Origin: Octopus bimaculoides
Lineage: Eukaryota
Direction: 5' to 3'
Length of the DNA: 43,902 nt
Assembly: GCF_001194135.2 (NCBI RefSeq)
Contig: NC_068993.1
Span: 8,952,299-8,996,200 of the forward strand
Part shown: positions 25,797 through 43,488 of the stretch, one piece after another
Numbering within the stretch: the stretch's first letter is position 1
Layout: each line of letters starts with the position of its first letter
Program-made: the position numbers and the translations under genes
The notes under the pieces: generated by a model
Database searches by the model: none
The model's input: the letters and a program-made list of their open reading frames with translations, nothing else
Told to the model about the DNA's origin: nothing

Positions 25797-28700
25797 CACA
25801 CATACATACTTCGATGTCTAATCCCAAAGTCCACCCAATAATCTTTGATAAGCACATCGTTAAATGCAATCTGTCTTAAAACTTTCCCCCCCTCTATCTA
25901 ACAAACCCGTGTTTTAGACTGTTTTCTTTGCTTTTTTTTTTTAAACTGTCTTTTGAGGATAGGGTGCACTATTCTATTGCAATTATATCCACATCTATAG
26001 TGCATTTTAAAGGTTTAAGGTGGACACAGTTCGAAGGATGGACGATTGGCCTCGGCTAGAGTTGAATTCATCGGTTCGATGCTCAAATTTTTTTTTTTTT
26101 TGCTGAAGGCCAGCAATTTTTAAGCGAAAATGAAAGTCGATCTCGGCGGAATTTGAACACAGAATGTAAAAGTTCGATGAATTGCCTCTAAGCATTTTAC
26201 CTGGTATGCTAACGATTCTGCCAGCTCACCGCTTAACTTCTTTATAAAAAGTTTGTACCCAGACACAAAGTTGCCCGTCCATTGCAGAAAAGAAGAAAAT
26301 GTGAGATAGCTCACTAGCTTCGCATTAAGCTGCTTCAGTTGTCGAGGACACCGTGTCAGCATTTTTTATCCCTTTGTCAGTCTACGTTCTTTCCTTTCTT
26401 TTTTGCTGTCGGCATTGCTTCAATGTATTCGGGCCTTCTTTTTTTATATATATAAAAACCGGTTTCAATTAGACTTTCTGCATTTCCTCTACCTTACCTA
26501 TGCAGACACATACAATGTGTGTGTTTTTAATAGCGGTTCTCAATGAGTTTGACATCATGGTGCACTTCTTATGTAAAGTTTAAAAGGAAACTTCGTTATA
26601 TATAGCTCGGTTCTTATAATCAGTCACTGCCGAACCGCTAAGTTGCGAGGGACTAAACACACCAACACCAGTTGTCAAGCTTTTTGTTNNNNNNNNNNNN
26701 NNNNNNNNNNNNNNNNNNNNNNNNNNNNNNNNNNNNNNNNNNNNNNNNNNNNNNNNNNNNNNNNNNNNNNNNNNNNNNNNGGGGGGGGGGGGGGCAAACA
26801 CAAACACACAACGGTCTTCATTCAATTTCCGTCTACCAAATTAACTCGCAAGGCTATCGTAGAAGACCCCCATCCAAGGTACCTTGCTGTGGGACTGAAT
26901 CTGGAATCGTGTGGTTGGGAAGCAAACTTCTTACCACATAACCACCCTTGTTTAGTTTCTCCTCCCTTTACAAACTAATGTTGAATCAGCTTTTCATTTT
27001 TTTTTTTTTTTTTCATTGACAGGATGTAGAAGCTGAAGCAGAAGACAGTGAAGCAGAGGAGGAAGAGGAAGAAGAAGCACCTGCTGAAGAGGAAGATGAT
27101 GAAGAAGAGGAAGAGGACGAAGCAGAAGAGCAAGGTGACGATGATGATGAGAATGAATCTGATCCGGAATATCTGGCAGATGGTGTTAAACCAGTGAAAG
27201 CACTCTTACTCAAGCAGCCACCCAAGAAGAATGGACAAGATGCTGAAGCTTACGAAGAACACATTGTACGTGGTCATTTTAATTTCATGTTGTTGTTTTG
27301 TTTACTTTCATTTAACATTTTGTGAACCATCGTTAGAGGTCTTTCTATTATCCATTCATTTGATTAACTGCCATTTCCAGTTGTGTTACTATCAGGGTAC
27401 TTTTGTCTGGCAATACCAAGGCAAATTTCTTGCCAAAGTATGTGTGTGTGTGTCCAAGCAGGATTCTCAATGTGTCGTGATTTTAGGTGCAAGCATCAAC
27501 CACAAGGTTTTGGATTCAGTCCAACTGCAGCACCCAGGGCCAGTGTCTTCTGCTATGGCCCCTGGCCTATTAGAGCCTTGTGAGTGGATTTGGTAAAAGG
27601 AAACTACATGTGTGTGTCTCCATGTCTTGATATAGCATGGGTAGTTGCATGCGAGTGTTGTTGTCAGTGCCATTGCCAATCTTCTGTGAAAACATGTGGC
27701 CATGCGGAAATATTGCCTTGCTTAGAAACAGGTGAGTGGTGGCTACAGGATAGCATCCAGCCATAGAAAATCTGCCTCGACAAATTCCGTCAGACCCATG
27801 CAAGCATGGAAAAATGTATATTACGATGATGGGGGTATATATATCATTTAACATCCTCGTTCCATATTGGCATGAGCTGGAAGGTCTGACAGGAGCAAGA
27901 TGCTCCAAGGACTGCATCATTCTCCACGATATACTTTGTCTGGTAGAGAAGCAAGGCCTAGACTTTTTACTGTTGTGGAAATTATTGGTGATAATTCTTC
28001 TTCAAAGTGACGAGTGAAGTTGCAGTTTGGGTGAACAAATGCAGTAGTTGAGATAGGCCTATGTTGTCGACTCTCTCTCTCTCTCTCTCACCTTTTTTTC
28101 TTCCTTTATGATTCTGTCCATTAGTTTGCATGTAATTGTTACTCTTGAATTGTGTATGCAATTATTTATTTTTGTTCAGGAGCCCGATTGGAGGGTAAAG
28201 TTGAATACAGAGTGGCCCAGGTCTAAGAAAGTTGATAGGAATATTGTGGTATACCCCTGGTGGTCAGCTATCATAGGGGAGACTCCCCTCTAGATTAAGT
28301 TAATAGGAAATTTAAATTCTAAATCAGAGTGAAAAGTAAGATGTACAGAATATTTAATATTTCTTTTTTTCTTTACACATTATAAAGATCTTACAGTTTT
28401 CAAAAAAGTTGATCTATCTTCGTAAACTTTCTCTGTAGTCTGTGTGGGTTGAATAGAAACTGTTACTTCTGAGCTAAGTTGACTGGATGTTTTTTTAACC
28501 TGCAGTTTTGTTACAATGTTTGTTTCAGCAAGCCGACAGGAGTAACCGGTTCGATTTCTTGCTGAAACAAACCGAGCTTTTTGCTCACTTTATGTCAACT
28601 GGTGGCCAAGGTGGAAAAGGCCCATCGAGTCCCCTTAAAATGAAACCTGGCCGTCCACGGCTGAAGAAAAATGACGAGAAAAGCAAGCTGGTTGCCATCG

Positions 28701-31700
28701 GAGAGTAAGTTTCGATTTTACTTTAATACATTTGTGTGCGTGTGTTTTTTTTTTTTTTTTTGTGTATTTACTAACGTTTTACTACTACTTGTTGGGTGAT
28801 TTCAGTTAAGTTTGGTTAATGTGAATTTTAATGATTTATCTTGCCAATAAATTAAAGGTTGCAGTTACTAGTGAACAATTGTGATGTGTTCAGCTGTAGT
28901 GTATTACTGATTTTTATTGTTTTTTTTCCCCCATTTATGTTTTCAAGTTGTGAACATTTTGTGTAAATCGATAAGTCAAAGGCATAAGCAAGCATAAAGA
29001 ATGTTGGGCTTTCAGTTACAACTGTAACTTGGTAGTTCTCTAAGCATGTGAAGTATGAGTTGCGTCTTTGTTCTGGAAAATGTGATGGGTGGGGATAGAT
29101 GTCGAAGATCCATTAAAACGTTTGAGACAGCCTCCTCCTCATGCTAGCATGTTTACTATCTAAGAGCTTCTCTCTTTCATTTTGTTTGCTCTTTTGTCAT
29201 CATTCGTAGACTATTGTGGAAAACATGAGCCAAAACTATCTCCAATGATATTTCCATTAAACATGGCAGCAGGAACATGATCAAAGACTGGATTGTTCTA
29301 GGATTGAAAAGATGAAGAATTTAGGTGGCAAAAAGAAAAAATATAGTTAATGAATTGTACAGTCGTGAGTTTAATCAAATACTTGGTGTCTATATATAAA
29401 AGTATGAATGTGTATATCTGATTTTTTTTCCATGTTGGTTTGGATTGAATGTGTCTGTTCCAACACAACATCTTGCCATTTTTCAAAGTCTTTCATTACC
29501 TGAATAACTTGACAACATTTCCAATCCCTGCCGGGGTCTATGTCATGGTTTTTTAATGGCTGGAGATCCTTCCTAATGCCAACCACTTCACATTGTTGAC
29601 CGGGTACATTTTATTGGGTCACGGGTACCAGAAAAGTTATCCACCTGGACAGAAGCATGACCTCCACCATGTATCCGTTTTTAAGATACTTGTGTGCACT
29701 TAATATGTATTTATGTATATCTTGGCTGTGTTCATCACTTTCTCATCTGGATGGACGTTTGCTTGCAGTGAAACTAGTATTTACTTTGCTGCTTGCAGCC
29801 TGATATCAATGCAGTTTCTTCATCTCCATCTGACAAGACTGTCTGATCTATAAGGCAGCGAACTGCATAAAGTCCTAGAGTTGGCTTTGGAACCACATCA
29901 GATAATTTGTTCAAATGAACTAAACATTGTTTAGCCCAAGTCGGCACTGAACAGGCAAGCCTACGATCATTGGTATTCCAGCTATAACCATCCTCTCTTT
30001 TTCTCTCTATTCTTAATTTGCGAATATAGTAGGAGATAATTTGAAGGAAATTTGGCTGCTAACTTTAGTAGGTTGAATAACCTCATAGAAGCTTTTCTTC
30101 TGTTGTCTTGTTACTGAAGTAGTTAGAGCATTAATAGGCTAGCCAACTTGTTTGGGCAGATAATCATACAATTTATTTAAAATGAAAATATATTAGCCCA
30201 GCAGTTAAGAATCCTGTAGCTAACATGCTTTGAATAGTTCAATTTTTTTTAATTTTATTTTTTATGCATTAGACTTTTCTTATTGACTATCTTAAATTTT
30301 CAGCCTTGCTGAAGGGGGTAGGGGGGTCTCTTTTCAAGTGTTTTTCAACGAAAATTTTGTTTTTATATTTGATAATTGTTATTTGGTTTGTTGCAAGTCG
30401 GGGTTGAAAGAAACAAAATTGTGAATTGTGTGTATTTATTACTTTTCTGGTAAAAGCTAGATTCCTCCACAGAAAAATACTTAGGAATTGCATATTTTGT
30501 TTTTTTGTTTTTTTTAAATTTTAGTTGTCATTTTTATTATTATTCATGTCGGGGGATATTTTAGTGTATTCATAGAACAATTCACCACATTCAGTTTCTG
30601 ATTGTTTCAAACATAGCTCCGAACCACTGTACAATCTTTAGGAATTGCCTGGCAGTCAAGTCTGTTTCCTCCTGACAAAATGCCATGCAGTAATTAATTT
30701 AGCTCCTTTATGTTTTGAGTTCAAATCCTGCCAAAGTCGACATTGCCTGTCATTCTTCTAGGGTCAGTTAAAATAAAGTATCGGTCAAGTATTTCTATCC
30801 CACGAAAATGTGTGGCAGCCTTGTGCTAAGTTAAAAACAAGATTGTCCTTGCTATTAGTAGTTAATTTGTTGTTTTATAGCTATTAACTTTTGAATGCAT
30901 GCATGTTGCCTAGGCTTTTGATAAAGCATGAAATCTCTTCCATTTTGGGTGAAAAAAAAATATAATTCAACCAAATACAAAATTAAAATGTTTATGTGCA
31001 GTCCACTTGCAGTGACTGAATGGTCAGCTTTTGTCTAAAGACCTGAAGAAAATGAACTCAAACCCAATCTTGCATTTTTTTTTTTTTTTTTTTTTCCTCT
31101 CGTTAAATACATGTTCAGAAAAACCTGCTGTGCTGTTTAGACAGTGAGACGAAATGCTTAATGAGCCTCTGAGGTTGAAATTAAGATTTTTTGATACAAT
31201 GAAGAAGTTTTGCTGATTTTCAAGGAAAGTAAATTTGAATACCAACTGAAATGTCTTTTAATCTTGGTTCCATTCTTATTGTTATCTTTTACATCTACAT
31301 TTTTTTGCTGAGGAATGTTGTTTTATCCAGTCTTCTGGAAAAAAAAAAATAACATTCATGGTTGAGTGATTTGTGTAAGCAAGGGTACTTGGTTTTTAAA
31401 ATATTTCCTTTAAATTCACTTAACCCTTTAGTATTTAAACCAGCCAGATCTGGCCTCTCACACCTACCCTTCAATGTCATTTTAAAACTAAACAATCCCA
31501 TCATCGAAATGTCAAAGCTACAAGATAATGCATGATTAATTCAAAACAATCATCGTCATCATCATCATCGTTTAACGTCCGCTTTGCATGCTAGCATGGG
31601 TTGGATGATTTGGCTAAGGACTGGCAAGCCAGAAGGCTGCATCAGGCTCCAATCTGATCTGGCAGAGTTTCTACAGCTGGATGCCCTTCCTAACGCCAAC

Positions 31701-33036
31701 CACTCCAAGAGTGTAGTGAGTGCTTTTACGTGCCACCGGCACGAGGGCCAGTCACACCACAGAGTAATCTAAAATGTTAAAACTCTTCTCAAGTAGTTTT
31801 GTCTTGCTCTGTATCAAAATGTTATTAGTTTTAATGAAAAGAATGATGCTGGTCTAAGAGCTCTCAGATGTAAGTCTCTCATCATTTAATGACCTATAAT
31901 TTTATGTCATTATCAATTCTGTTGCAGACACTGAAAACTGCTTCTCTTTGGACTTCACTTTTACAATGTTCCTAGTAATAGCATCTCTTAAATCCATTCT
32001 TGGTGTACTTTTCATTGTGGTTAGACCTTGTGTTTAGAATAAAACCATAACATTTTGGTTCAAGTGGAGTCTCTGTTTTTTTTGTTTTTTTATGCCAGAA
32101 CATGGAAAACAATGAATGCAAGAGCTGTAAACTATCTCAGCCGATCAGCTTCTGATTGTTATTCTTTGCTATTCCATTCTTGTATGGATTTGATGGGTCA
32201 TCTCCAGAAGACCATCTTGCTACTATTTGCAGTCTTCTGTCACCTCTTTTCTTGGGTTAAGCATTCTGAGAACAGACATCATCACTTCCTCCCATCTCTT
32301 CTTTGGTCTTCCTCATCTCTAGGATTCCCCTACTTGGATTGTACGTCTTTTTTTTATTCAATTGTCGTCCTCCATTCCTTTCCAATCATTGGATAATGTG
32401 GATCATGTACCAATATGTCCATGCAAGTGCAGTCTCCCCTTCTGCAGCTGATCCTTTATAACCTACTCATTTGTGGTCCATCATTTATTTACGCTAACAT
32501 CTGACATGAATATTTAAATTTATTTTGTAAGATTTTCGACATTAGTCTATATACACGTATATGCTAAATTTAAGAAAGGATACATAAATACATTCTACCA
32601 AAAAATGAAGAGAGAAATGATTATGTAGAAAAAATAGAAGCAAAATATTAATTTTGATGTGTAATATGTTTACATATCTCCATTTGGATTTTCTATTTTT
32701 CTAAAAAGATCATTTGTTCCTGTGACCAAACATAGTGAAATGAGACAGTAATGAAACTTGGTCTTTCAGATTGGTGTGATGGACTCTTAATTTTCAGAGA
32801 CTTGAGTTCGAAACCTGCTTGAGTAATGGTGTTATTTGTATAAATAGTTCTGTTATGTGTTGTTGGAAGTGATTTTATAGAGTTGAATATATTCATTTCT
32901 GTGGGTCACTTTTGTGTTGTGTAATTTTATGTACAATCAATCAGTAAAGTTCCCCACCCAATCAATACATTGTTGTCATTGTTCTGTGTATGGTTAATAC
33001 CTATCTCCTGCAACTCCTTTATAGTGATTTAAACAA

Positions 33037-33084
<48 letters not shown>

Positions 33085-36000
33085 NNNNNNNNNNNNNNNN
33101 NNNNNNNNNNNNNNNNNNNNNNNNNNNNNNNNNNTATATATATACAGTTTATATATATATATATATATATATATCGACTTTAAATAGAGCTCAAAACTGA
33201 TCCATTGAAAATACTTTATTATAATAATAATAATGAAAATGACCTATGAACATTTCGATGCAATATCCAGAACAATTCATACATATTATAAAATATTATA
33301 AAATATGGGATACCACATCTCATCGGGGCCTTATTATTATTATTATTATTATTATTATTAGTAATATGCAGACAATAAAAATATATATATATTCTTGTAT
33401 ATATTTGGTCATTTCTGTCATGTGTATTGTCTCTCTCTCTCTCTTGTAATTAATGAGACCAACAAAAATTGTTGAACTTCCAGTTCTTTATATGCTTGTC
33501 AGATATGTCACAAGACGTGTGTGTGTGTACGTGTATGTACTGGAAAAAGATTAATGTTTCTGTGTCTGTAATAGATCTTTGTTGTTCCCACCATTCCAAA
33601 GTTTTCATGTGAAATGTTTCATTTATAAAATAGAAAATATTTCTTTCTATGACAGTGAAAAGAAACCAAAGACTGATGCTGTAAAATCAGATGCCCCAGA
33701 AGAAGAGTAAGTGCCATGTATGGTCCCATACAGTTTCCCTATTACTGCAGTGTTGTCCTAGTTGTATATATGGTCAGTGGAGTCCCCACCAACCACTGCA
33801 GTGTGATCTATACAGTTCCCATGTATGAAATTGTATAGTATTTTCGACGAATACGGTGTTGTTTTCATCATTCCGTATATGGTGAATTTAGTTGTCATAG
33901 TTACATTTATAATCACTACAGCTCACCTGTCATTGTAATGTTGTCGTAGTCACATGTGTGATCAGAACAGTTCACCTTCCACTGTAGAAAAGTAGTAGCT
34001 CCATATTTCTCACTCCTACATAAACCATTCCAATGCTGCTGTCCCAAATTTCTGGTCATTTCATCACAACCCTTCTCCGTAGTGTTTGGCTTTGAAGTCA
34101 TTTTATCGTTCAATGCTTTTCTCTACAGTTCTACCTTTTGAACATCATTTTCTTAAGTCATTTATCCAAACAGATTATTGTCTTATTTCACTGCTTTATT
34201 TTATTATTTTTTTTTTTTTAATGGAGGAAGGGTTAATTTTTTCTATATAGTCATAGTTGTCTTTCTTTATTAGAATTTAAAAAAACTCATCTTTTTTTTT
34301 TTTTTTTTGCATTGATTAGGTTATATCGATTGTGTTTCTCATCATTTCTATCTTTTTCTTTTTTTTTCTTTTCACTAATGACCTTAATTATATCAAAAGC
34401 TAGAATCAATTGTTTATTCAGCTGTCATTTCTTTACAAACTCAGCAGATATATTGAAAGACATGTTATGTATGTGTATGTATTGAGAAAAAAAAAACAAA
34501 ATCTAAAAAGTGAATGTTTCCATGTTTGTTTGTGATAGATCTTTGTTGTTTACATTTGAAATGAATGCTTTGTTTATAAAATAGAAAATATTTCTTTCTA
34601 TAACAGTGAAAAGAAACCCAACGCTGATGGTGTAAAATCAGACGCCCCAGAAGAAGAGTAAGTGCCATGTATGGTCCCATACAGTTTTCCCTATCACTGC
34701 AGTGTTGTGGTAGTTCTGCATCTGTATATGCTCGATGCAGTTCACCTACCATTGCAGTGATGTTATCGTAGGTTCTCTATGTGGTCAGTACAGTTTCTAT
34801 ACCACTTCAGTGTTGTCGGTAACTTCTATGGTCAATGTTGTGTCTCTTCTTTTTATACCACTCATTCTAATGCTGTTCTCTCATATTTTTCTGGTCATTC
34901 CATTGCAACCCTTCTCTGCAGTGTGTGACTTTTTACATAAAGTTACTTTATCAACTACTATTTTTCTCCACTATTCTTACTTTTAGTGCCAATTTCTAAA
35001 GTCACTTTCATACAATGTAACAATGTAGAGATATTGTCTTAGTGGTTTAGTTGTACATTTTTTTTTCTTTGATTGGGAATGGGGGAGAATTTTACTATAG
35101 TTTCCTCTTTAGTCAACCATGCTTTACTAATCTAATTTTTAAAGAACTGTGTCTATATTGTATATATTTGGTTATTCCATGATTTCTGTCTTAGCTCTAT
35201 CTTTCCAAAGTGACCTACTCTTAGGCATCAAAAACTGGGCTCAATTATTCAACTTTCATAAGTTTTGCTTTTGAAATCTTTTCTTGATTGTAAAATAGAA
35301 ATAGTTATTTCTCATGATTGTGGAAAAGAAGCACAAAGACTGCTACAGTAAAATCAGAAGCCTCAGGTGAAGAATGAGTTCTGTATATGGTCAATACAAT
35401 TCACCTACCTCTGCAGTATTGTTACATCTATACGTATGGCTAATACAGTTTACCTACAACAGTAGTGATGTTGTTAGTCCATTAACCACTGCAGTGTTGT
35501 CATGGATATGAGTATTTTCAGTATAGTTACTAAAAAGGTACAATGTTCTCTTAGCTAATATATAGTTAATACAATTTCTTAATCTCTGCAGTAGTTTAAA
35601 TTACTGCAACTCTTTCTCTATAATATACATGTTTTTTTATATATGTGGTCACTTCTATTGTGTTACTTCTATCTTTTACTAATTACCAATTCTTATACAT
35701 CAAAAAGCTGGAATCAATTGTTCAACATCCAATTTCCTTTACATCCTTGACAATTATCTCGGTAGGCATGAATTATTAATTTTTTTTTTTTTTTCTGCTT
35801 CCATATTTGTTTGTACTAGATCTTTGTTCCTGCCACTTTTTCCAATGTTTTGTTTGTAATGCGAAATATTTCTTTCTATGACAGTGAAAAGAAACCAACG
35901 ACTGGTGATGTAAAAACAGATGACCCAGCAGATGAGTGAGTAAACCTTGTCCCAAAAAAAAAAAAAAAAAAACAAAATAGAATGAAATCGGAACTTCCAT

Positions 36001-38691
36001 CATCAAATATTCTTAATGGCAACTTTATTGCAGTTGATGCTACGCTACCTTCGTGAATTTATTCTCCTTCTCAACAGATTAATGATCTTATATATATATA
36101 ACATCAGATTTTAAGATCATTAATTCATATGGAAGCAATTATTATTTGATTTGATTTTATTTATTTTTTAATATAGAAGTACAAGACAGACCGAAGTCAA
36201 AGAATATACTTTGCTGGATTGTGTGTACATTTGTTGTTCATTTAAGCTTTTCATAGTACCTGAACTAATTGCTCAGTCTAGGAACCTTTATATAAGGCCA
36301 TATATAATAGTACCCACTTATTCTGTACACCTGAAATTTCTGCGTTGTAATAGTGTGTATAAGGTTGATAACTAAAGTGTGTCTAGTGGTCAGAGAATGT
36401 GGCACTAATAGTCCAAGGTATGCTGTGGACTGCCTGTTGTGTGTGAGAGAGAGCTTTTGTCTCTGTGCAGGCTGGTGTGCATGTACACTCATATATGTAT
36501 ATATATACACACACAAACACAAACACGTCTGGTGTTAGTCTTAGTGGTTTTGAAAACAAATTATCGTTTTTACGTCTGCTATTTTCCATGCTAGCATGGG
36601 TTAGAAGAGTACGCTTCAGCACAGCGTCTCACCCCCTTACGCTATAAAATTTCATTTTGGTTTTGAATTCTAGCTTTTGCTGATTGAAAGACTGTTGACT
36701 GTTGTTGTCAGACCACTTTTGGTTGCAACAAGATTTACCATTTTGCATGCTTCCATGGCATTGTTTACTTTTCTGCCAAATTCTGTGTGTAGTTTTCGCT
36801 CCTGCATTCTTTCTTTCACCCATTTTTATTTTTGTTTTTTGTTTTTACTAATTTTTCAGATTTCTAAAATTTTATTTTGGTTAGCATTATTATTGTGTTA
36901 CATTGCATTTCATTAACAATTTAATCTTTGTTCTTGTACTTCTCTATCTATCTATATATGTATATGTGTGAAAATATATATATATATATATATATTCTCA
37001 CAACAATTATCTTGCATGTAGTTCTTATTGAATGTGTAAGTTGTCACGTCATAGTGTGTGTTTGTGTATGTATATATGGGTATGCATGTGTGTGTACACT
37101 TATGTCTACACATGCTTGTGTGTGTGTGTGTGTGTATAGATATTATAATGTTTATATACATACACATGATCCAGCAGGGAATTTTGATAGTTTTGAATTT
37201 TCAAATGCTGTCAGGGAGTGTGCAAACGAAATACTGAAGAATATTACGGCTATTAGGAAGGCTGCAAAGAATTGTTGTTATTCTGCATCAAGACGTGTCT
37301 CTACACTGTGTAATTCAGATAATAATGTGCAAAGAATATTGCATTTTGAATTAAATTCTCTTATTCATAGAAGTATAAATTATACAAAAAAAAATTGAAT
37401 CCATATGATAGAGGAAAGCCAGAAAAAGTTTGCGGAAATTATTTCTCATGAGCAGTAAAGTGCCTTTCTAGCTGTTAGGTAGCATAAATGGGCAAAATAT
37501 ATGCTACTAGTGGCACAGCAGTCCACAGTAGCTTTATGAGTGTTGCCTTCACTGTGAATGAATGTGTAACAATGTGGTGCTGTGACGTAAACATTAGTGT
37601 GAAAGACTGGTGTCTCTTTGAAGAGGGCAGACACATTGTGACTGAATTCTCATCATTGTGTGATTATGTTGTGTCAAATTGTGCCAGCTTCTTTTCCCCA
37701 AAATTGAATAGATTTGGCATTAATGTTGTTGTTGGCACTCCGTCGCTTACGACGTCGAAGGTTCCAGTTGATCCGATCAACAGAACAGCCTGCTCGTGAA
37801 ATTAACATGCAAGTGGCTGAGCACTCCACAGACACGTGTACCCTTAACGTAGTTCTCGGGGATATTCAGCGTGACACAGTGTGACAAGGCTTACCCTTTG
37901 AACTACAGGCACAACAGAAACAGGAAGTAAGAGTGAGAGAAAGTTGTGGTGGAAGAGTACAGCAGGGTTCGCCACCATCCCCTGCCGGAGCCTCGTGGAG
38001 CTTTAGGTGTTTTCGCCCAATAAACACTCACAATGCCCGGTCTGGGAATCGAAACCACGATCCTATAACCGCGAGTCCGCTGCCCTAACCACTGGGCCAT
38101 TGTGCCTCCACTGTGGCATTAATACACAAGATGAAGCACACAGCCATGCAGCAAGAGCTTCTATGGACATTAGAATTGAAGAAATGTTTTTCAACCATGT
38201 CATGTCACAGTGCGATGACACGTAGCCTGCCTGCTCAGTTGTCTGATACTTCCGTTTCTGATGAGCTGCCACAAAAGGAAAATGCTCAATATTCCTCACA
38301 TATCAGACAAATTGAAAGCTGCTATTTTGGGGGCAAAACCTCATTACATGACACAATAAATACCTGGCTACAGTGTATGCTTGCAGAAGAATGGGTAAAC
38401 GTTTGGTTGGCAATATTCTAAAGACTAAATCCTGCGCAAAATCTGCCTTGCCTTTCTTCCTTTCGGGGTCATCAATATAATCAACCAATCCTTTCCCTTT
38501 AAATTGATGGCCCAGTGCCAAAATTTGAAGCAATTTTAAGGACTAATGAACAGTTACTTAGGTGTTATTTATGTGCTTGTAAATGGCACCCATTATTTTG
38601 TACATTCAGACAATAAAGTTGATAATATCTTCTATTTATTTACTACCATTTATAGGTTGTCAGATTTCTATGCTGGACCCTGTGTGTGTTT

Positions 38692-38739
<48 letters not shown>

Positions 38740-41700
38740 GAGTGTGTGTGTAAAATGTAAATTATAAGCTGTTTGTCAACTAGTTTCTATTAGAAAATAT
38801 GAGATTTATTTATAATTTATTCAATTTTCATTATTACGTTCCGAGTTCATATTCCTGCTGGGCTCAACTTTGCTTTAAGTGATCGTTCCCTCCCTCTGAT
38901 GTTAGTAGTATCATCATTATCATAGCAGTGGAGATGTGGAGGCTGTAGACAGTAGTTCTAGTTTGGCTGTGTCTAATTCAGAACTCTACTGCTCTTAAGT
39001 TTGACTTTTGTCTCTTCAGCACAATGTGAAATAAGTAGCAGTAATATACTGAGGTAGGACGATTGATATAAAGCTAATTTGTCTCACAAAATAATGTTGG
39101 CCTTGTGCCTAGTCAAAAGAATCAATTCTCTGTCACTTATTCTATTAGGTGAAAATCTTGAATATTAATTACAAATCAAAGAATTGTTGTTGCTGTTTAG
39201 TCTCAAATCAGCTTTGGTTGAACAGGCCTGTGGTCAAAACCTGGAACAGTCTTAACCATCCTGGGTCTATTTTTTTCCAGGAATATTGTACACTGATCCA
39301 CTTTATCCAGTGGTGGTAAGGAATGGATTATGGGATATGTTTGGCTGCTATGTGTAGTGGGGTCAAGCAACCATGCAGAATCTTCCTCATTGGCTTGCAA
39401 ATTCAGGAATGATTCTACCTGGATTTGATGACTTTATTACACAAGACACCTGAAAGGACAAATTGATCACCTTCACTGGTTTTAATGCCAGTTTTAAAAC
39501 TGACTTCATAGTATCATACGTTTGCACCTTTAACTTCCTTTTTTTTTTTTATACCATGCTAGCATATGTTGGGCAAAGGCATTTTGTAGGCACATCGTTT
39601 TAAAGCTGAACACTTTCCCTGTTGCTAACCCTTGGCTATTTTACAAGTAAAGGATTTACACAGCTTCAAGGTGATTAGTCTTACTCTTTTACTTGTTTCA
39701 GTCATTTGATTGTGGCCATGCTGGAGCACCGCCTTTAGTCGAACAAATCGACCCCAGGGCTTATTCTTTGTAAGCCTAGTACTTATTCTATCAGTCTCTT
39801 TTGCTGAACCGCTAAGTTACGGGGACATAAACACACCAGCATCGGTTGTCAAGCGATGTGGGNNNNNNNNNNNNNCACAAACACACACACACACACACAC
39901 ACATACATATATACGACGGGCTTCTTTCAGTTTCCGTCTACTAAATCCACTCACTGAACCCGGAACCATGTGGTTGGTAAGCAAGCTCCTTACCACACAG
40001 CCACTTCTATGCCTATTGATTCTACTCACAATTCAGTGTTCAGCCAGGGGTTATCAAAGATACCTGCCCAGAGTGCCATGCAGTGGGACTGAACCTGAAA
40101 CCATATAATTGTGAAGTGAACTTCTTAACCGCACAACCATTCCTGTGTCTTTACCATAGCCTACCTTATTATTAGTTATAGGTTCCAGAAAAGCTATTTC
40201 GATTGCATGCTGCTCTACATGTCTATAAGCTCAATCTTATTACTGAGCCAATGTGGAAGCTTAAACTGCAAATTCTTCTAAAACTAGCAGCCAAATTTCC
40301 CCACATCTTCATCATTTAACATGTGTTCTCCATGCAGGCATGGGTTGGACGGTCTGACAGGAACTGCCTACACTCCAATTAGGTGTTTTTGGCATGGTTT
40401 CTATGGCTGGATGCCCTTCCTAATGCCAACCACTTTAGAAAGTGTACTGAGTGCTCTTTACATGGCACCAGCCCGGGTGATTTATGCATGGTACAGGTGC
40501 ATTGCACCAGTACCCACAAGCCTGCTATACAAGGACCTTTCAACTTAGAGGGGGACTTGGATTTAGGGCCCATGGCTATAAAGGGCTACCATTGTGAAAA
40601 ATTAGAAGACTGTAGTCCTATGTACACTGTGCCAGAAAGAAAAAGATGGGGTTGGTTATGGTTAGAACAGGTTTGATCATAGATTTGCTGTGAGGACTGA
40701 CCTGGACTAAACGACAACAATTTTATTGTGAGTAACAAAATTAATTTTTCTTTGGTAAAGTAAGATATGTAGTAGGCAACTGAGGGGTCCTGTATGTTGT
40801 CACTCAAACCTGCTAGAAATAGCAGCCAAGTGTCCTTCGAATCAATCCTACTTTTTTGAAGAAATTTTCCATTCTGAGATAAATGGACATGTGCATATCA
40901 CTAAGTGGGTGAGGTGCATTAATAAGTAAGAGTTAGGGCAAATGAAGAAATTATTAACATTTAGTTGAAAATATACTAAAAAAAAAACATTAACTTTGAG
41001 TTAACATTTTAATGCTCTCTGCATTAAATATGTTAACACTAATTTAACTGTTATCTTTTCATGCAGATGGCGCCTCTGAGTTTTTGTTTTTATATTCTAG
41101 AGAACTCTATTTTTCTATGCCAACCAGTGATACCTGCATTAAATATGTTAACACTAACTTAATTATTGCATATGTTGGCTGACTTTCCATAAAAATACCT
41201 TGTCAGAAATATTGCGTGTGGACTTAAGTCTTCATTATTATTTTTTTATTATTATTATTTCTGTGTTTTGTTGTCTATCAGTTTAATTGGTGTATTGATC
41301 ATAAGAAAATCTCATACCTAGGGAGTGCTGCGTTTTATTCCCTTCATTTCATTTTATTTGATTTTATTTTGCAGCCATCGTCACCGACGTACAGAACAAG
41401 AAGAAGATGAAGAATTATTGATAGAAAGCAAGAAATCAGTCAATGTTGAAATTAGATTTGAAAAATCTCCATCTTGTAAGTTTTATTGTGTTTGCTGTCT
41501 TTATATTCTAGTGCCATGTAGAAAGCACCCTGTACACTCTGTAAAGTGACTGGCGTTAGGAAGGGTCTCTAACTGTAGAAGCCTTGCCAAAACAGACAAC
41601 TGGAGCCTGGTGCAGCTCTAGCCTTGCAAACTCCTGTCAAAGCATCAATCCTGTGCCAGCATGGAAAACATGTTAAATGAGGATGAATAACGATGTGGCT

Positions 41701-43488
41701 GTGTGGTAAGAAGCTTGCTTCCCAACCACATGGTTCTAGGTTCAGTCCCAGTGCGTGGCCCCTTGTACAAGTGTCTTCTACTATAACTTCAGGTCAACCA
41801 GAGCTTTGTAAGTGGATATAAGATATAACTGAGAGAAGTCTGTCGTGTGTTTGAGTCCTTGTCTTGATATCATGCAACAGTTTAAAATAAGTTTCACTGT
41901 CATACAAGCTGTGCCCTTTGTTCCCAGTATTCCATGAAAGCGTTTCCAGCTGTAGAAAATCTGTCTCAACAAATTCCAACTGACCCATGCGAGCATGGAG
42001 AAGTAGACTTTAAATCGATGATGATGACATTGACAACAATTACGTATGACATATATATATATATATAACATTGTCTTTTTGTTTTTAGATGTTCACAATG
42101 GTGAGTTGAGAGATTATCAAATAAGAGGATTAAACTGGATGATATCACTGTATGAACATGGTATTAATGGTATTTTGGCTGATGAAATGGTAAGTTGATG
42201 GTTTTTGGCATCGGTCTGTACATTTAAACCTTTTTGATACCAAATCACCCGAGACTCCTTGTGGTTCTGTGATATGAATGTCCTGTCTTAAAGTAGTCCA
42301 AATGAAAATCTTGCATCAAAATTTCATGTTAATCTATGTTCCTGCACCACCTAGATAATGGTCATTTTACTAAATTCTTCTTTTCAAAATTAGTTCAAAG
42401 GTAGTTTTATTTCAACAAAATATGGTAACAAAAAGATATTGGAAGATGTGCACGAATTTTTAGTTAACCCTTGTTTCATGTGTTTTAGATAATTGAAAGT
42501 TTTTCCTTTCATAAGTCCCAAGTTGCTCTAGTAGTTGTAAAAAAAAAAATTGGGTGTGTGTATCATATATGGTGCCTGAATGCCAGGCAAATACATCCTG
42601 TGTATTACAAGTGAAACAAAGGGCAGGACAACCTGGCTGCAACCACCTCTGGCTCTGTAGTTCAAATGTCATGTTTTCAAAGGTTCTGAATTAAAATCTT
42701 CCTCAAAACCTTAGTCACAATTTATGTTCCTAACACTAGCTTAATGACAACTAAGTTATTTTACTAATTTCTTTGTTATATTTAAAATTAATTAAAAGAA
42801 ACACAGAGCATCTCAACAGAAATAGGGTAACAAAACGGTTAAAGTATGTGTTTGTATTTGTGTTGTAGTCTGCTATTTTATATTTTGTTTAGATTGAATA
42901 AAATTGATTGGTGTTCTGTTTTTATGAAAACCTACATGAACATTCTTAGTTATAATACTCATCATAATATATTTGTTATCATGTTTAAGACTTTTACTAG
43001 TTCCAGTCATTGATTTTATTTTGTAGGGTCTTGGAAAAACCTTACAGACTATCGCTCTGCTCGGTTACATGAAACATTATAGAAATATTCATTCACCACA
43101 TTTAGTAATTGTCCCAAAGTCAACTCTGGCAAACTGGGAAAATGAATTCCTACGTTGGGTCCCTTCCATCCGAGCTGTCTGTTTGATAGGAGACCAAAAC
43201 CAGAGAGTGAGTATACCATCTCTGTTTTTCCATCTTATTTCGAAATATATCATTAGATATCTGTTTATGCCTGTGAATTACATCATGACCTTGATCTCCA
43301 GTTTGCTCATCGTTAACTATTGTATATTCCAGGCCACTTTTATTCGTGATGTATTGATGCCCGGTGAATGGGATGTGTGTATTACATCTTACGAAATGGT
43401 TATCAGAGAGAAAGCAGTTTTCAAAAAATTTAACTGGCGCTATCTCGTGATAGACGAAGCCCACAGAATAAAAAATGAAAAATCGAAG
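23014..43488 (+). CDS. SMARCA5: ISWI/SNF2H-type chromatin remodeling ATPase, 5' part. join(23014-23073, 27023-27265, 28529-28704, 41375-41475, 42089-42189, 43027-43206, 43333-43488), 339 aa, 3'-partial
   Basis: Exons join in frame with GT-AG sites. [67 protein letters not shown] and [13 protein letters not shown] are near-identical to SNF2H/ISWI. Confidence 0.97.
23205..23520. repeat. TA/CA-rich compound microsatellite in ISWI intron 1
   Basis: Directly visible. Confidence 0.9.
24770..24910 (-). mobile_element. SINE family D
   Basis: cgaccccgaaaggatgaaaagcaaagtcgacctcggcagaatttgaa. Confidence 0.8.
25133..25217. repeat. 85-bp double-hairpin insertion flanked by 8-bp direct repeats
   Basis: 17-bp stem at 25139-25183, 22-bp perfect palindrome at 25195-25216, aaaaacac at 25125-25132 and 25218-25225. 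Confidence 0.7.
26085..26235 (-). mobile_element. SINE family D head
   Basis: aaagtcgatctcggcggaatttgaacacag...gctaacgattctgccagctc. Confidence 0.75.
26590..26945 (-). mobile_element. SINE family B spanning an assembly gap
   Basis: gccgaaccgctaagtt...; ccgtctaccaaatt...tcttaccaca. Confidence 0.75.
27023..27265 (+). CDS. SMARCA5: ISWI coding exon 2, Glu/Asp tract ([15 protein letters not shown]...AEAYEEHI)
   Basis: Poly-T tract cattgacag| and donor ATT|gtacgt; 243 nt, phase 0/0. The YEEHI end aligns with SNF2H YEEKM before QxDR. Confidence 0.9.
27490..27625 (+). mobile_element. SINE family B head
   Basis: aaccacaaggttttggattcagtcc...gccttgtgagtggatttggt. Confidence 0.7.
28529..28704 (+). 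CDS. SMARCA5: ISWI coding exon 3 ([21 protein letters not shown]...SKLVAIG)
   Basis: tgtttcag| and GA|gtaagt; ends in phase 2; strong similarity to the SNF2H N-terminal region. Confidence 0.96.
30630..30850 (+). mobile_element. SINE family D, degenerate
   Basis: gagttcaaatcctgccaaagtcgacattgcct. Confidence 0.6.
31424..31785. mobile_element. Second copy of the TTAA-type MITE, interrupted by a family C SINE
   Basis: ttaa|ccctttagtatt start; shares ggcctctcacacctaccct and agataatgcatgattaattcaaaa with the 14448 copy; resumes as acagagtaatct after the SINE. Confidence 0.6.
31551..31755 (-). mobile_element. Family C element nested in the MITE
   Basis: Near-identical to the 13579 and 43680 copies. 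Confidence 0.88.
33656..33706 (+). CDS. Candidate ISWI cassette exon copy 1 (51 nt; [17 protein letters not shown])
   Basis: ttctttctatgacag| and GA|gtaagt; phase 2/2 matches the host intron; no stop. Confidence 0.7.
34607..34657 (+). CDS. Candidate ISWI cassette exon copy 2 (51 nt; [17 protein letters not shown])
   Basis: ttctttctataacag| and GA|gtaagt; 46/51 identical to copy 1; phase 2/2. Confidence 0.7.
35321..35373 (+). pseudogene. Dead copy (pseudo-exon) of the 51-nt cassette
   Basis: Homologous sequence, but the acceptor reads gattg instead of gacag, the donor reads atgagt, and the length is 53 nt. Confidence 0.65.
35885..35935 (+). CDS. Candidate ISWI cassette exon copy 4 (51 nt; [17 protein letters not shown])
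   Basis: ttctttctatgacag| and GA|gtgagt; 44/51 identical to copy 1; phase 2/2. Confidence 0.7.
37170..38300 (+). mobile_element. Degenerate Tc1/mariner transposase relic, rosa (DD41D)-like, split by a SINE
   Basis: Fragments across frames: SRR...VQRILHFEL (HTH), NGQNICY* (NKQNCRYW-like), [31 protein letters not shown] (QDGATAHTA-like), D.T*PA.S (WP.RS-like). Many stops and frameshifts. Confidence 0.65.
37725..38113 (-). mobile_element. SINE family A, full length
   Basis: Reverse complement of the 16580 copy; 10-bp TSD tggcattaat (37715-37724, 38114-38123). Confidence 0.9.
39685..40004 (-). mobile_element. SINE family B
   Basis: Reverse complement of the consensus from tail to gtggctgtgtggtaag head. 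Confidence 0.88.
40312..40468 (-). mobile_element. Family C element
   Basis: catgggttggacgg...ggatgcccttcctaatgccaaccac. Confidence 0.8.
41375..41475 (+). CDS. SMARCA5: ISWI coding exon 4, AutoN region ([33 protein letters not shown])
   Basis: ttttgcag|C completes the GAC (Asp) codon from exon 3; donor T|gtaagt. Confidence 0.96.
41511..41685 (+). mobile_element. Family C element
   Basis: gtgccatgtagaaagcacc...ggcgttaggaaggg...gcatggaaaaca. Confidence 0.78.
41695..41850 (+). mobile_element. SINE family B head
   Basis: gtggctgtgtggtaagaagcttgcttcccaaccacatgg. Confidence 0.85.
42089..42189 (+). CDS. SMARCA5: ISWI coding exon 5 ([34 protein letters not shown])
   Basis: tttttag|AT and ATG|gtaagt; SNF2 Q-motif and start of motif I. 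Confidence 0.97.
42228..42838. mobile_element. Two degenerate copies of another TTAA-type MITE (about 42228-42432 and 42630-42838)
   Basis: Mutual similarity (aaaatctt..., tatgttcct..., ggtaacaaaa); ttaa|acctttttgatacc start and ggtaacaaaacgg|ttaa end. Confidence 0.45.
43027..43206 (+). CDS. SMARCA5: ISWI coding exon 6 ([15 protein letters not shown]...IGDQNQR)
   Basis: ttttgtag| and AGA|gtgagt; Walker A GKT and VPKSTL motif Ia. Confidence 0.97.
43333..43488 (+). CDS. SMARCA5: ISWI coding exon 7 ([22 protein letters not shown]...[13 protein letters not shown])
   Basis: attccag| and AAG|gtaatt; DEAH Walker B. Confidence 0.97.

What the first reader, a model, noticed from the sequence alone, without database searches (positions are those of the whole stretch)
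33656..35935. Hidden array of duplicated 51-nt cassette exons that would insert modules directly in front of the ISWI AutoN (H4-tail mimic) patch
Seen: three paralogous 51-nt blocks (33656-33706, 34607-34657, 35885-35935) lie in the 12.7-kb intron 3. Each has a conserved polypyrimidine+AG acceptor and a GA|gt(a/g)agt donor. They are indel-free, although their flanks carry many indels. All are phase 2/2, exactly the phase of the host intron, so any subset splices in frame: ...[71 protein letters not shown]. Known: the RHR(K/R) patch and following acidic segment form the ISWI N-terminal autoinhibitory AutoN region that mimics the histone H4 basic patch, and this junction is normally short and conserved. 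Inference: a lineage-specific combinatorial splicing system (0-3 modules, up to 8 isoforms; spacings of 900 and 1227 nt do not force mutual exclusion) could tune autoinhibition or H4-tail dependence of the remodeler. I know of no description of this.
Basis: partly seen in the sequence, partly recalled or inferred. Interest (0 to 1): 0.9.

Follow-up and report, generated by a model that had tools for sequence, protein, structure and literature searches.

The report
Three duplicated mini-exons in ISWI gene
Three tandemly duplicated 51-base exons in a chromatin-remodelling (ISWI) gene are real, but the main messenger RNA normally carries all three together, adding a 51-residue acidic flexible spacer just before the enzyme's self-inhibitory patch rather than acting as a hidden splicing switch.

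Summary
Three paralogous 51-nt blocks (33656-33706, 34607-34657, 35885-35935) with AG acceptors and GT donors lie in the 12.7-kb intron of an ISWI-family ATPase gene. A fourth, decayed copy lies at 35321-35373.

RNA-seq contigs show that they are genuine exons. In 10 of 12 runs of the window's organism that I laid on the array (5 studies), the main mRNA contig joins c1 to c2 and c2 to c3 at exactly the predicted GT..AG sites. One contig gives the whole chain from exon 3 through c1, c2 and c3 to exon 4.

So they are not hidden, and the dominant transcript uses them as co-included exons. They encode a 51-residue Lys/Asp/Glu/Pro-rich acidic spacer (net charge -8) between the AT-hook and AutoN. 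Eleven other animal ISWI N-termini have no insert there.

The combinatorial-cassette idea is only weakly supported. Two runs from one sample of a sister species carry c1 joined directly to c3, and one run of the window's organism has a branch right after exon 3. Copy-number polymorphism or an assembly artefact could explain both. Contigs cannot exclude minor skipping.

This is a lineage-specific tandem exon duplication that lengthens a disordered linker. It is of moderate interest.

The parts
28529..28704 (+). ISWI exon 3. It encodes the ppHSA motif ([15 protein letters not shown]) and the AT-hook ([11 protein letters not shown]) and ends ..VAIG + GA (phase 2).
   Evidence: Sequence. tblastn with a bivalve, a vertebrate and an insect-like ISWI N-terminus. 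The RNA contig ends at 28704 and continues into c1.
33656..33706 (+). Module exon c1 (51 nt, phase 2-2), encoding (D)[16 protein letters not shown].
   Evidence: Joint 33706->34607 (GT..AG) in 10 organism-A runs. The loose end before 33656 matches the end of exon 3 (X5).
34607..34657 (+). Module exon c2 (51 nt, phase 2-2), encoding (D)[16 protein letters not shown]. This is the copy missing from some organism-B transcripts.
   Evidence: Joints 33706->34607 and 34657->35885. Absent from the contigs of X37 and X24, present in X38 and X29.
35321..35373 (+). Pseudo-exon (fourth copy). Acceptor AG->TG, donor GT->AT, +2 nt, in-frame stop.
   Evidence: nhmmer E 2e-8 and MAFFT alignment, sequence. RNA depth is only at intron level and there are no joints.
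35885..35935 (+). Module exon c3 (51 nt, phase 2-2), encoding (D)[16 protein letters not shown]. This is the oldest copy.
   Evidence: Joint 34657->35885. The loose end behind 35935 is CCATCGTCACCGACG, the start of exon 4 (X5).
41375..41475 (+). ISWI exon 4, encoding (D)[15 protein letters not shown]..., i.e. AutoN plus AcidicN.
   Evidence: Sequence, tblastn, alignment with 11 homologues.
33551..35884 (+). Tandemly duplicated genomic units (exon plus flanking intron). The c1 and c2 units are 951 nt apart and 92% identical over 127 nt around the exon. Next come the pseudo-exon unit and the upstream flank of c3, which starts 1278 nt after c2.
   Evidence: the repeat finder families D3, D7, D10, D13, D14 and the alignment.
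35796..35884 (+). Conserved intronic block upstream of c3, with counterparts at 33551-33655 and 34515-34606. It holds the polypyrimidine tract and acceptor and is a candidate splicing element. It is the only flank still alignable between c3 and c1/c2.
   Evidence: (D10: 70-88% identity).

Best explanation
A roughly 1-kb stretch of intron 3 of an ISWI-family ATPase gene, holding one symmetrical (phase 2-2) 51-nt exon, was duplicated in tandem several times. Three copies stay functional and one has decayed.

In the window's organism the spliceosome includes all three live copies, in order, in the dominant mRNA. The protein therefore carries a fixed 51-residue insert (3 x 17 aa) between the AT-hook and the AutoN/AcidicN autoinhibitory segment.

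The insert is rich in Lys, Asp, Glu and Pro and almost devoid of hydrophobic residues. Its net charge is -8, and its sequence drifts quickly while length, frame and composition are kept. It therefore most likely acts as an intrinsically disordered acidic spacer that lengthens the tether between ppHSA/AT-hook and AutoN. It is unlikely to be a folded module or a splicing-controlled switch.

Shown: the exons, their splice junctions, their co-inclusion, their presence in two sister species, and the absence of an insert in other animals. Inferred: the disorder, the spacer role, and any effect on autoinhibition.
For: Splicing in the window's organism (A):
- Joints 33706->34607 and 34657->35885, both GT..AG, lie in the main mRNA contig of X14, X6, X15, X16, X1-X4 and X5, X9.
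- Exon contig depth is 8-360, against 0-16 for the neighbouring intron.
- In X1-X6 and X9 a single 2.4-4.7 kb contig runs unbroken through all three exons.
- The X5 contig gives the end of exon 3 before c1 and the start of exon 4 after c3.

Sister species:
- Organism C (X29) expresses c1, c2 and c3 with 2, 0 and 1 differences.
- In organisms B and C exon 3 is followed by c1.

Gene identity:
- ppHSA, GRPR, RHRR and EEDEELL are present, and downstream exons encode [10 protein letters not shown] and GLGKTLQT.

Lineage specificity:
- Eleven other ISWI N-termini (bivalve, tick, vertebrates, insect-like) read GD(Y/H/L)RHR with no insert.
- The closest available relative, L001, has an intron of about 85 nt at the same position and phase, with no modules.

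Nature of the peptide:
- 18 acidic and 10 basic residues, 3 hydrophobic of 51, GRAVY -1.94, deep in the disordered zone of the charge-hydropathy plot, no Pfam hit.
- All 7 c1-c3 differences are non-synonymous. The two resolved module differences between species are also non-synonymous (Thr->Ala in c1, Asp->Gly in c3), whereas both exon-3 differences are synonymous.

Birth and death of copies:
- A pseudo-exon has lost both splice sites and its frame.
Against: Logan contigs keep only the major path, so minor skipped isoforms would be removed as bulges. Constitutive inclusion is therefore shown only for the dominant transcript.

Organism B sample S20 yields c1->c3 contigs without c2 in two runs.

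The disorder and spacer role rest on composition only; no structure prediction or assay was possible. Only close congeners could be sampled, so the age and selective maintenance of the insert are poorly constrained.
Confidence: 0.72

Rival explanations
1. One reading: the three exons are independently regulated cassette exons. Tissue-specific inclusion of 0-3 modules would tune the spacing or charge in front of AutoN and so tune ISWI autoinhibition and H4-tail dependence.
For: - All exons are phase 2-2, so any subset stays in frame.
- In organism B sample S20, two runs (X37, X24) carry contigs with c1 joined directly to c3 and no c2, while sample S19 (X38) expresses c2.
- In organism-A run X13, the exon-3 contig stops exactly after the 12-nt prefix shared by all modules. 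That requires two different modules to follow exon 3.
Against: - Ten organism-A runs from 5 studies, including a four-run set from one 2015 study, show all three exons co-included in the dominant contig. No c1->c3 joint was seen in any of the 12 organism-A runs laid on the array.
- No exon3->exon4 junction was seen anywhere.
- All six splice sites are strong consensus sites, as expected for constitutive micro-exons.
- The variable cases have other explanations: copy-number polymorphism or the assembler.
- There is no evidence at all for an effect on autoinhibition.
Confidence: 0.12
2. The variation in module number is genetic, not regulatory. Unequal crossing-over or gene conversion between the 92%-identical, ~950-bp c1 and c2 units creates alleles with two or four modules, or with hybrid modules. 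Each allele is spliced constitutively.
For: - The c1 and c2 units are long, tandem and 92% identical around the exon (D3), which makes them a good substrate for such recombination.
- The pseudo-exon shows ongoing turnover of units.
- The c2-less form tracks the sample: both runs of S20 lack c2, and S19 has it.
That fits an altered or absent c1 allele.
Against: No DNA from the same individuals could be examined. I could not find a single allele model that reproduces every contig end in X13 (note). Sample S20 could simply be a different tissue.
Confidence: 0.3
3. The c1->c3 contigs of organism B are an assembly artefact. The contig ends suggest that in organisms B and C the ends of c1 and c2 are identical for about 27 nt, and the starts of c2 and c3 for 12 nt. 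The c1|c2 and c2|c3 junction 31-mers would then coincide, and a patchily covered c2 path could be clipped, leaving a false c1->c3 path.
For: The contig ends in X29 and X38 (3 nt after c1 and c2; 18 or 27 nt before c2 and c3) fit exactly such a shared-junction tangle. X37 and X24 have low depth (11 and 3.7).
Against: The c1->c3 contig appears in two independent runs. c2 has zero depth in both, while c1 and c3 lie in one contig. Losing every c2 31-mer at 11x depth is unlikely if c2 were fully included.
Confidence: 0.15

Closest known systems
ISWI N-terminal region (ppHSA - AT-hook - AutoN - AcidicN) as defined in Drosophila ISWI (Ludwigsen et al. 2017, PMC5305211; Clapier & Cairns 2012, the latter as cited in that paper)
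   Same: The host protein has all four motifs in the canonical order: [31 protein letters not shown] and [10 protein letters not shown].
   Different: A 51-residue acidic repeat is inserted between the AT-hook and AutoN. In 11 other animals the two are joined directly by ...GD(Y/H/L)RHR.... No such insert is mentioned in that paper, and no paper combining 'octopus' and 'ISWI' deals with it.
Tandem exon duplication in animal genes (reviewed in PMC9013439, which cites the 2002 survey reporting tandemly duplicated exons in about 10% of animal genes)
   Same: Adjacent homologous exons have identical length and phase. They arose by duplication of an exon together with its flanking intron, and include an unexpressed decayed copy.
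   Different: The classic outcome is mutually exclusive choice of one copy. Here all copies are included together in one mRNA, so the duplication lengthens the protein rather than creating substitution isoforms.
Titin PEVK-type modules: short, charged, proline-rich repeats, each encoded by its own symmetrical exon (from my own knowledge, not tested here)
   Same: Short exon-sized modules of low complexity and high charge, containing proline, expanded by exon duplication and plausibly acting as a flexible tether.
   Different: PEVK exons are extensively differentially spliced to set spring length. That is not shown here. There is no sequence homology, and the protein context is unrelated.
Known alternative splicing of ISWI paralogues: human SNF2L/SMARCA1 exons 1, 13 and 24 (PMC2266716)
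   Same: Splicing-level diversification of an ISWI ATPase.
   Different: [quoted passage not shown] None is described at the AT-hook/AutoN junction. Here alternative use is unproven.

Membership tests
ISWI-family SNF2 ATPase (host gene) | N-terminal ppHSA motif, AutoN basic patch (RHRR) and AcidicN (EEDEELL) in that order | tested here: met
   Alignment with 11 ISWI N-termini: R7, F8, L11, L12, T15, E16, F18, H20, F21, R112, H113, T116, E117 and E119-L125 are invariant. Motif definitions from PMC5305211.
ISWI-family SNF2 ATPase (host gene) | SNF2 ATPase core beginning downstream (RDYQ..GLNW, motif I GLGKT) | tested here: met
   tblastn finds [30 protein letters not shown] at 42100-42189 and [19 protein letters not shown] at 43027-43200. 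The Pfam DBINO hit on the ppHSA region is below the curated cut-off (23.9 vs 31 bits).
Tandemly duplicated exons | Adjacent exons homologous in sequence, with the same length and phase | tested here: met
   78-90% identity, all 51 nt, phase 2-2, no indels. Chance expectation 0.04 matches.
Tandemly duplicated exons | Each copy is actually spliced into RNA | tested here: met
   GT..AG joints at all predicted sites in 10 runs. The fourth copy is not spliced.
Mutually exclusive exon cluster | One and only one copy per mRNA | tested here: not met
   c1, c2 and c3 occupy consecutive 51-nt segments of the same contig, e.g. X6 positions 880-1032 and X1 positions 777-929.
Cassette (skipped/included) exon array | Both inclusion and skipping junctions present in RNA of one organism that carries the exon in its genome | tested here: inconclusive
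   Organism A: inclusion only in 10 runs, plus an unexplained branch in X13. Organism B: c1->c3 in sample S20 and c2 expressed in sample S19, but the genotypes are unknown. Contigs cannot show minor isoforms.
Intrinsically disordered linker | Low hydropathy and high net charge, no domain match, fast sequence drift with conserved composition | tested here: met
   Mean normalised hydropathy 0.285 against a boundary of 0.470, net charge -8, no Pfam hit, 7 of 7 c1-c3 differences non-synonymous.

The most novel reading that the evidence does not exclude
Module number in front of AutoN is regulated by tissue, stage or species through skipping of c2, and possibly c1. The changed tether length or acidic charge then measurably alters ISWI autoinhibition or H4-tail dependence. 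That would be a splicing-controlled rheostat on a chromatin remodeller.
Probability: 0.1. Interest if true: 0.65.

Novelty: new member of a known kind. Interest (0 to 1): 0.3.

Why it matters
The AutoN/AcidicN segment and its docking on ATPase lobe 2 set how ISWI remodellers sense the H4 tail and chromatin. A natural enzyme carrying a 51-residue acidic spacer right at the AutoN boundary is a ready-made test of how much tether length between ppHSA/AT-hook and AutoN matters.

It is also a clean, datable example of a protein linker growing by tandem duplication of a symmetrical micro-exon. The youngest pair, an older copy and a dead copy all sit side by side. If module number proves to be regulated, the interest would rise. 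As it stands this is an ordinary evolutionary mechanism in an interesting place.

Tried and rejected
- Laying RNA contigs on the whole exon3-exon4 interval (13.5 kb) was swamped by high-copy repeats, with 1182 joints not shown. I switched to the 2.4-kb array and to exon 3 alone.
- The protein database search with the spliced N-terminus returned only fragmentary ISWI N-termini of other phyla and no cephalopod protein. Conservation beyond the two close congeners could not be tested.
I expected structure prediction to refuse it under the same rule and did not try, so no structure prediction was made.
- I tried to reconstruct the de Bruijn graph behind run X13: the exon-3 contig ends 12 nt past the exon, an 81-nt contig holds c2, the c3 contig starts 18 nt before c3, and c1 is absent. 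No single model of skipping, gene conversion or deletion reproduced all contig ends, so it is recorded as unexplained.
- The contig breaks around the modules in organism C (X29) first looked like alternative splicing. They are fully explained by 31-mers shared between the c1|c2 and c2|c3 junctions, so I rejected them as evidence.
- Breaks 30 nt into exon 4 (X14, X15) and at the end of c1 (X16) fit the unspliced pre-mRNA branch, not skipping.
- Tandem Repeats Finder does not call the ~50-nt intronic repeat as tandem.
- 'Not real exons' and 'part of another overlapping transcript' are rejected. The same contigs continue into ISWI exons on both sides.

Full report
**1. What is in the sequence**

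The window region 33.5-36.1 kb holds three 51-nt blocks at exactly the coordinates given: 33656-33706 (c1), 34607-34657 (c2) and 35885-35935 (c3).
- Each is preceded by tttctttctat(g/a)acag.
- Each is followed by gtaagt (c1, c2) or gtgagt (c3).
- They are 46/51, 44/51 and 40/51 identical, without indels.

A degenerate 19-mer gives 4 matches against 0.04 expected by chance: the three copies plus one 3-mismatch hit elsewhere on the other strand. An nhmmer profile finds the three copies at E about 1e-25, plus one further copy at 35301-35381 (E 2e-8) and nothing else in the 43.9-kb window.

That fourth copy, at 35321-35373 between c2 and c3, is a pseudo-exon.
- Its acceptor AG is now TG and its donor GT is now AT.
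- It has a 2-nt insertion, and the old frame hits TAA.

The exons sit in tandemly duplicated units of exon plus intron.
- c1 and c2 are 951 nt apart and 92% identical over 127 nt spanning the exon.
- c3 shares only the exon, the splice signals and about 100 nt of upstream intron with them.

Only the proposed frame is open in all three copies.

**2. The host gene**

- Exon 3 (28529-28704) encodes [22 protein letters not shown]...[22 protein letters not shown], i.e. ppHSA and the AT-hook.
- Exon 4 (41375-41475) encodes [15 protein letters not shown]..., i.e. AutoN and AcidicN.
- Further exons encode [30 protein letters not shown] (42100-42189) and [19 protein letters not shown] (43027-43200).

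This is an ISWI-family ATPase on the + strand. The motif names follow Ludwigsen et al. 2017 (PMC5305211). Exon 3 ends with GA and exon 4 starts with C. Each module is T + 16 codons + GA, so any number of modules keeps the frame.

**3. Are they exons?**

Yes. I laid RNA-seq contigs of the window's organism (coded A) on 33590-35990. The joints 33706->34607 and 34657->35885, both GT..AG, appear in:
- X14, X6, X15, X16
- X1-X4
- X5, X9

That is ten runs from five studies. The contig carrying them is the main mRNA, with depth 8-360 against 0-16 for adjacent intron. In X1-X6 and X9 it is a single 2.4-4.7 kb contig in which c1, c2 and c3 occupy three consecutive 51-nt segments.

In X5 the letters before 33656 are ...GCTGGTTGCCATCGGAGA (the end of exon 3) and those behind 35935 are CCATCGTCACCGACG (the start of exon 4). 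The full chain E3-c1-c2-c3-E4 is therefore seen in one molecule-like contig.

The pseudo-exon has only intron-level depth and no joints. The contig breaks seen in X14 and X15 (30 nt into exon 4) and in X16 (at the end of c1) are those expected from the co-assembled unspliced pre-mRNA, not from skipping (my reading of the k=31 graph).

**4. Are they cassettes?**

In organism A no c1->c3 joint was seen in the twelve runs laid on the array. Ten show all three included, X28 had no coverage, and X13 is discussed below.

This is a statement about the dominant isoform only. Logan contigs drop lower-coverage parallel paths, so minor skipping is not excluded.

Three observations keep the question open.
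- (a) Sister organism B, sample S20: run X37 has a 1422-nt contig and run X24 a 226-nt contig in which c1 is directly followed by c3, and c2 has zero depth. In another sample of B (S19, X38) c2 is expressed.
- (b) In B and C the contig ends (3 nt after c1 and c2; 18 or 27 nt before c2 and c3) indicate that c1 and c2 share a ~27-nt 3' end. Junction 31-mers then coincide, which explains the breaks and could in principle create a false c1->c3 path.
- (c) In organism-A run X13 the exon-3 contig stops exactly 12 nt past the exon, after TGAAAAGAAACC. That is the prefix common to all modules; the 13th letter is A in c1 and c3 and C in c2. This requires two different modules to follow exon 3. I could not find one model that explains every contig end there.

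Alternative splicing, copy-number or gene-conversion polymorphism between the 92%-identical units, and assembly artefact all remain possible for (a) and (c).

**5. Conservation**

Organism C expresses c1, c2 and c3 with 2, 0 and 1 differences from the window. In B and C exon 3 is followed by c1 reading TGAAAAGAAACCAAAGGCTG..., which turns Thr into Ala. In B, c3 carries 35908 A>G, which turns Asp into Gly. The two differences in exon 3 (28627, 28672) are both synonymous.

Between paralogues, all 7 c1-c3 differences are non-synonymous. So frame, length, splice sites and composition are kept, but the residues are not.

Outside these congeners, 11 ISWI N-termini (bivalve, tick, vertebrates, insect-like) join ...GD directly to (Y/H/L)RHR. 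The closest available relative is an unnamed ENA contig, L001. It has an intron of about 85 nt at the same position and phase (GGAGA|gtgagt...tgcag|CCATCGTCA) and no module.

The insert is therefore lineage-specific. How deep it goes in cephalopods could not be tested with the collections on hand.

**6. What it most likely does**

The 51-residue insert has 18 Asp/Glu, 10 Lys, 6 Pro and only 3 hydrophobic residues. GRAVY is -1.94 and net charge is -8. It lies far inside the disordered region of the charge-hydropathy plot and has no Pfam match.

The best-supported reading is a disordered acidic spacer, grown by tandem duplication of a symmetrical micro-exon. It lengthens the tether between ppHSA/AT-hook and AutoN-AcidicN.

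Whether it changes autoinhibition is untested. According to PMC5305211, ppHSA, AutoN and AcidicN are proposed to dock against ATPase lobe 2, and the AT-hook is poorly conserved. A longer linker may therefore be tolerated without consequence, or its acidity could add to AcidicN-like effects. Both are inference.

**7. Comparison and novelty**

Mechanistically this is tandem exon duplication (PMC9013439), but with co-inclusion instead of the classic mutually exclusive choice. It resembles repeat growth in exon-encoded charged linkers such as titin PEVK (my own knowledge).

Known splicing variation of ISWI paralogues (SNF2L exons 1, 13 and 24; PMC2266716) is not described at this junction. I found no paper on octopus ISWI.

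Because the exons are in the dominant transcript, any RNA-supported annotation should already contain them. 'Hidden' is therefore unlikely, though I could not check the annotation. It fits the closest named protein hit being a bivalve mollusc.

**8. Verdict**

- They are not hidden, and they are not shown to be combinatorial cassettes.
- Interest is moderate to low (0.3).
- The regulated-rheostat reading keeps about a 10% probability.

Noticed in passing
window 35321-35373: A fourth, decayed copy of the module exon lies between c2 and c3. Both splice sites are lost, there is a +2 nt insertion and an in-frame stop. Position 35329 reads C instead of A in all four organism-A runs, the only runs where the tool lists it, so it is a reference error or a SNP.
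   Followed up: yes
window 33551-33583, 34515-34547, 35796-35828: An intronic block (TGTTTGT..ATAGATCTTTGTT) about 90-105 nt upstream of each live exon is conserved even in the old c3 unit, whose other flanks no longer align. It may be a branch-point or splicing-enhancer element.
   Followed up: partly
window 32954-33021, 33734-33990, 34686-34820, 35361-35600: A dispersed ~40-50-nt intronic repeat (TATATGGTCAATACAGTTCACCTACCACTGCAGTGTTGT-like) occurs several times after c1, c2 and the pseudo-exon, and once upstream of c1. The upstream copy hints at a remnant of a further unit. Tandem Repeats Finder does not call it tandem.
   Followed up: partly
window 33085-33134 and ten other N runs (e.g. 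1556-2090, 9681-10502): There are eleven assembly gaps, one only about 520 nt upstream of c1. RNA shows exon 3 joined directly to c1, so no expressed module is hidden in that gap in the main transcript.
   Followed up: yes
window 31457-31907, 32810-33260, 37771-38221, 38673-39123, 39575-40025: These intron stretches have RNA-contig word depths of 1e4 to 4e5, so they are high-copy repeats or microsatellites. They swamp read-laying over the whole intron. A near-fixed A>G at 37759 lies inside one of them.
   Followed up: no
L001 3001-3447 (ENA ERZ26858995 contig): This is the closest non-congener ISWI N-terminus found. It has the same intron position and phase, an intron of only about 85 nt, and no modules. 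The gene caller had read through the intron. The organism is unknown.
   Followed up: partly
This implies a second kind of module directly after exon 3 in that sample. It remains unexplained.
   Followed up: partly
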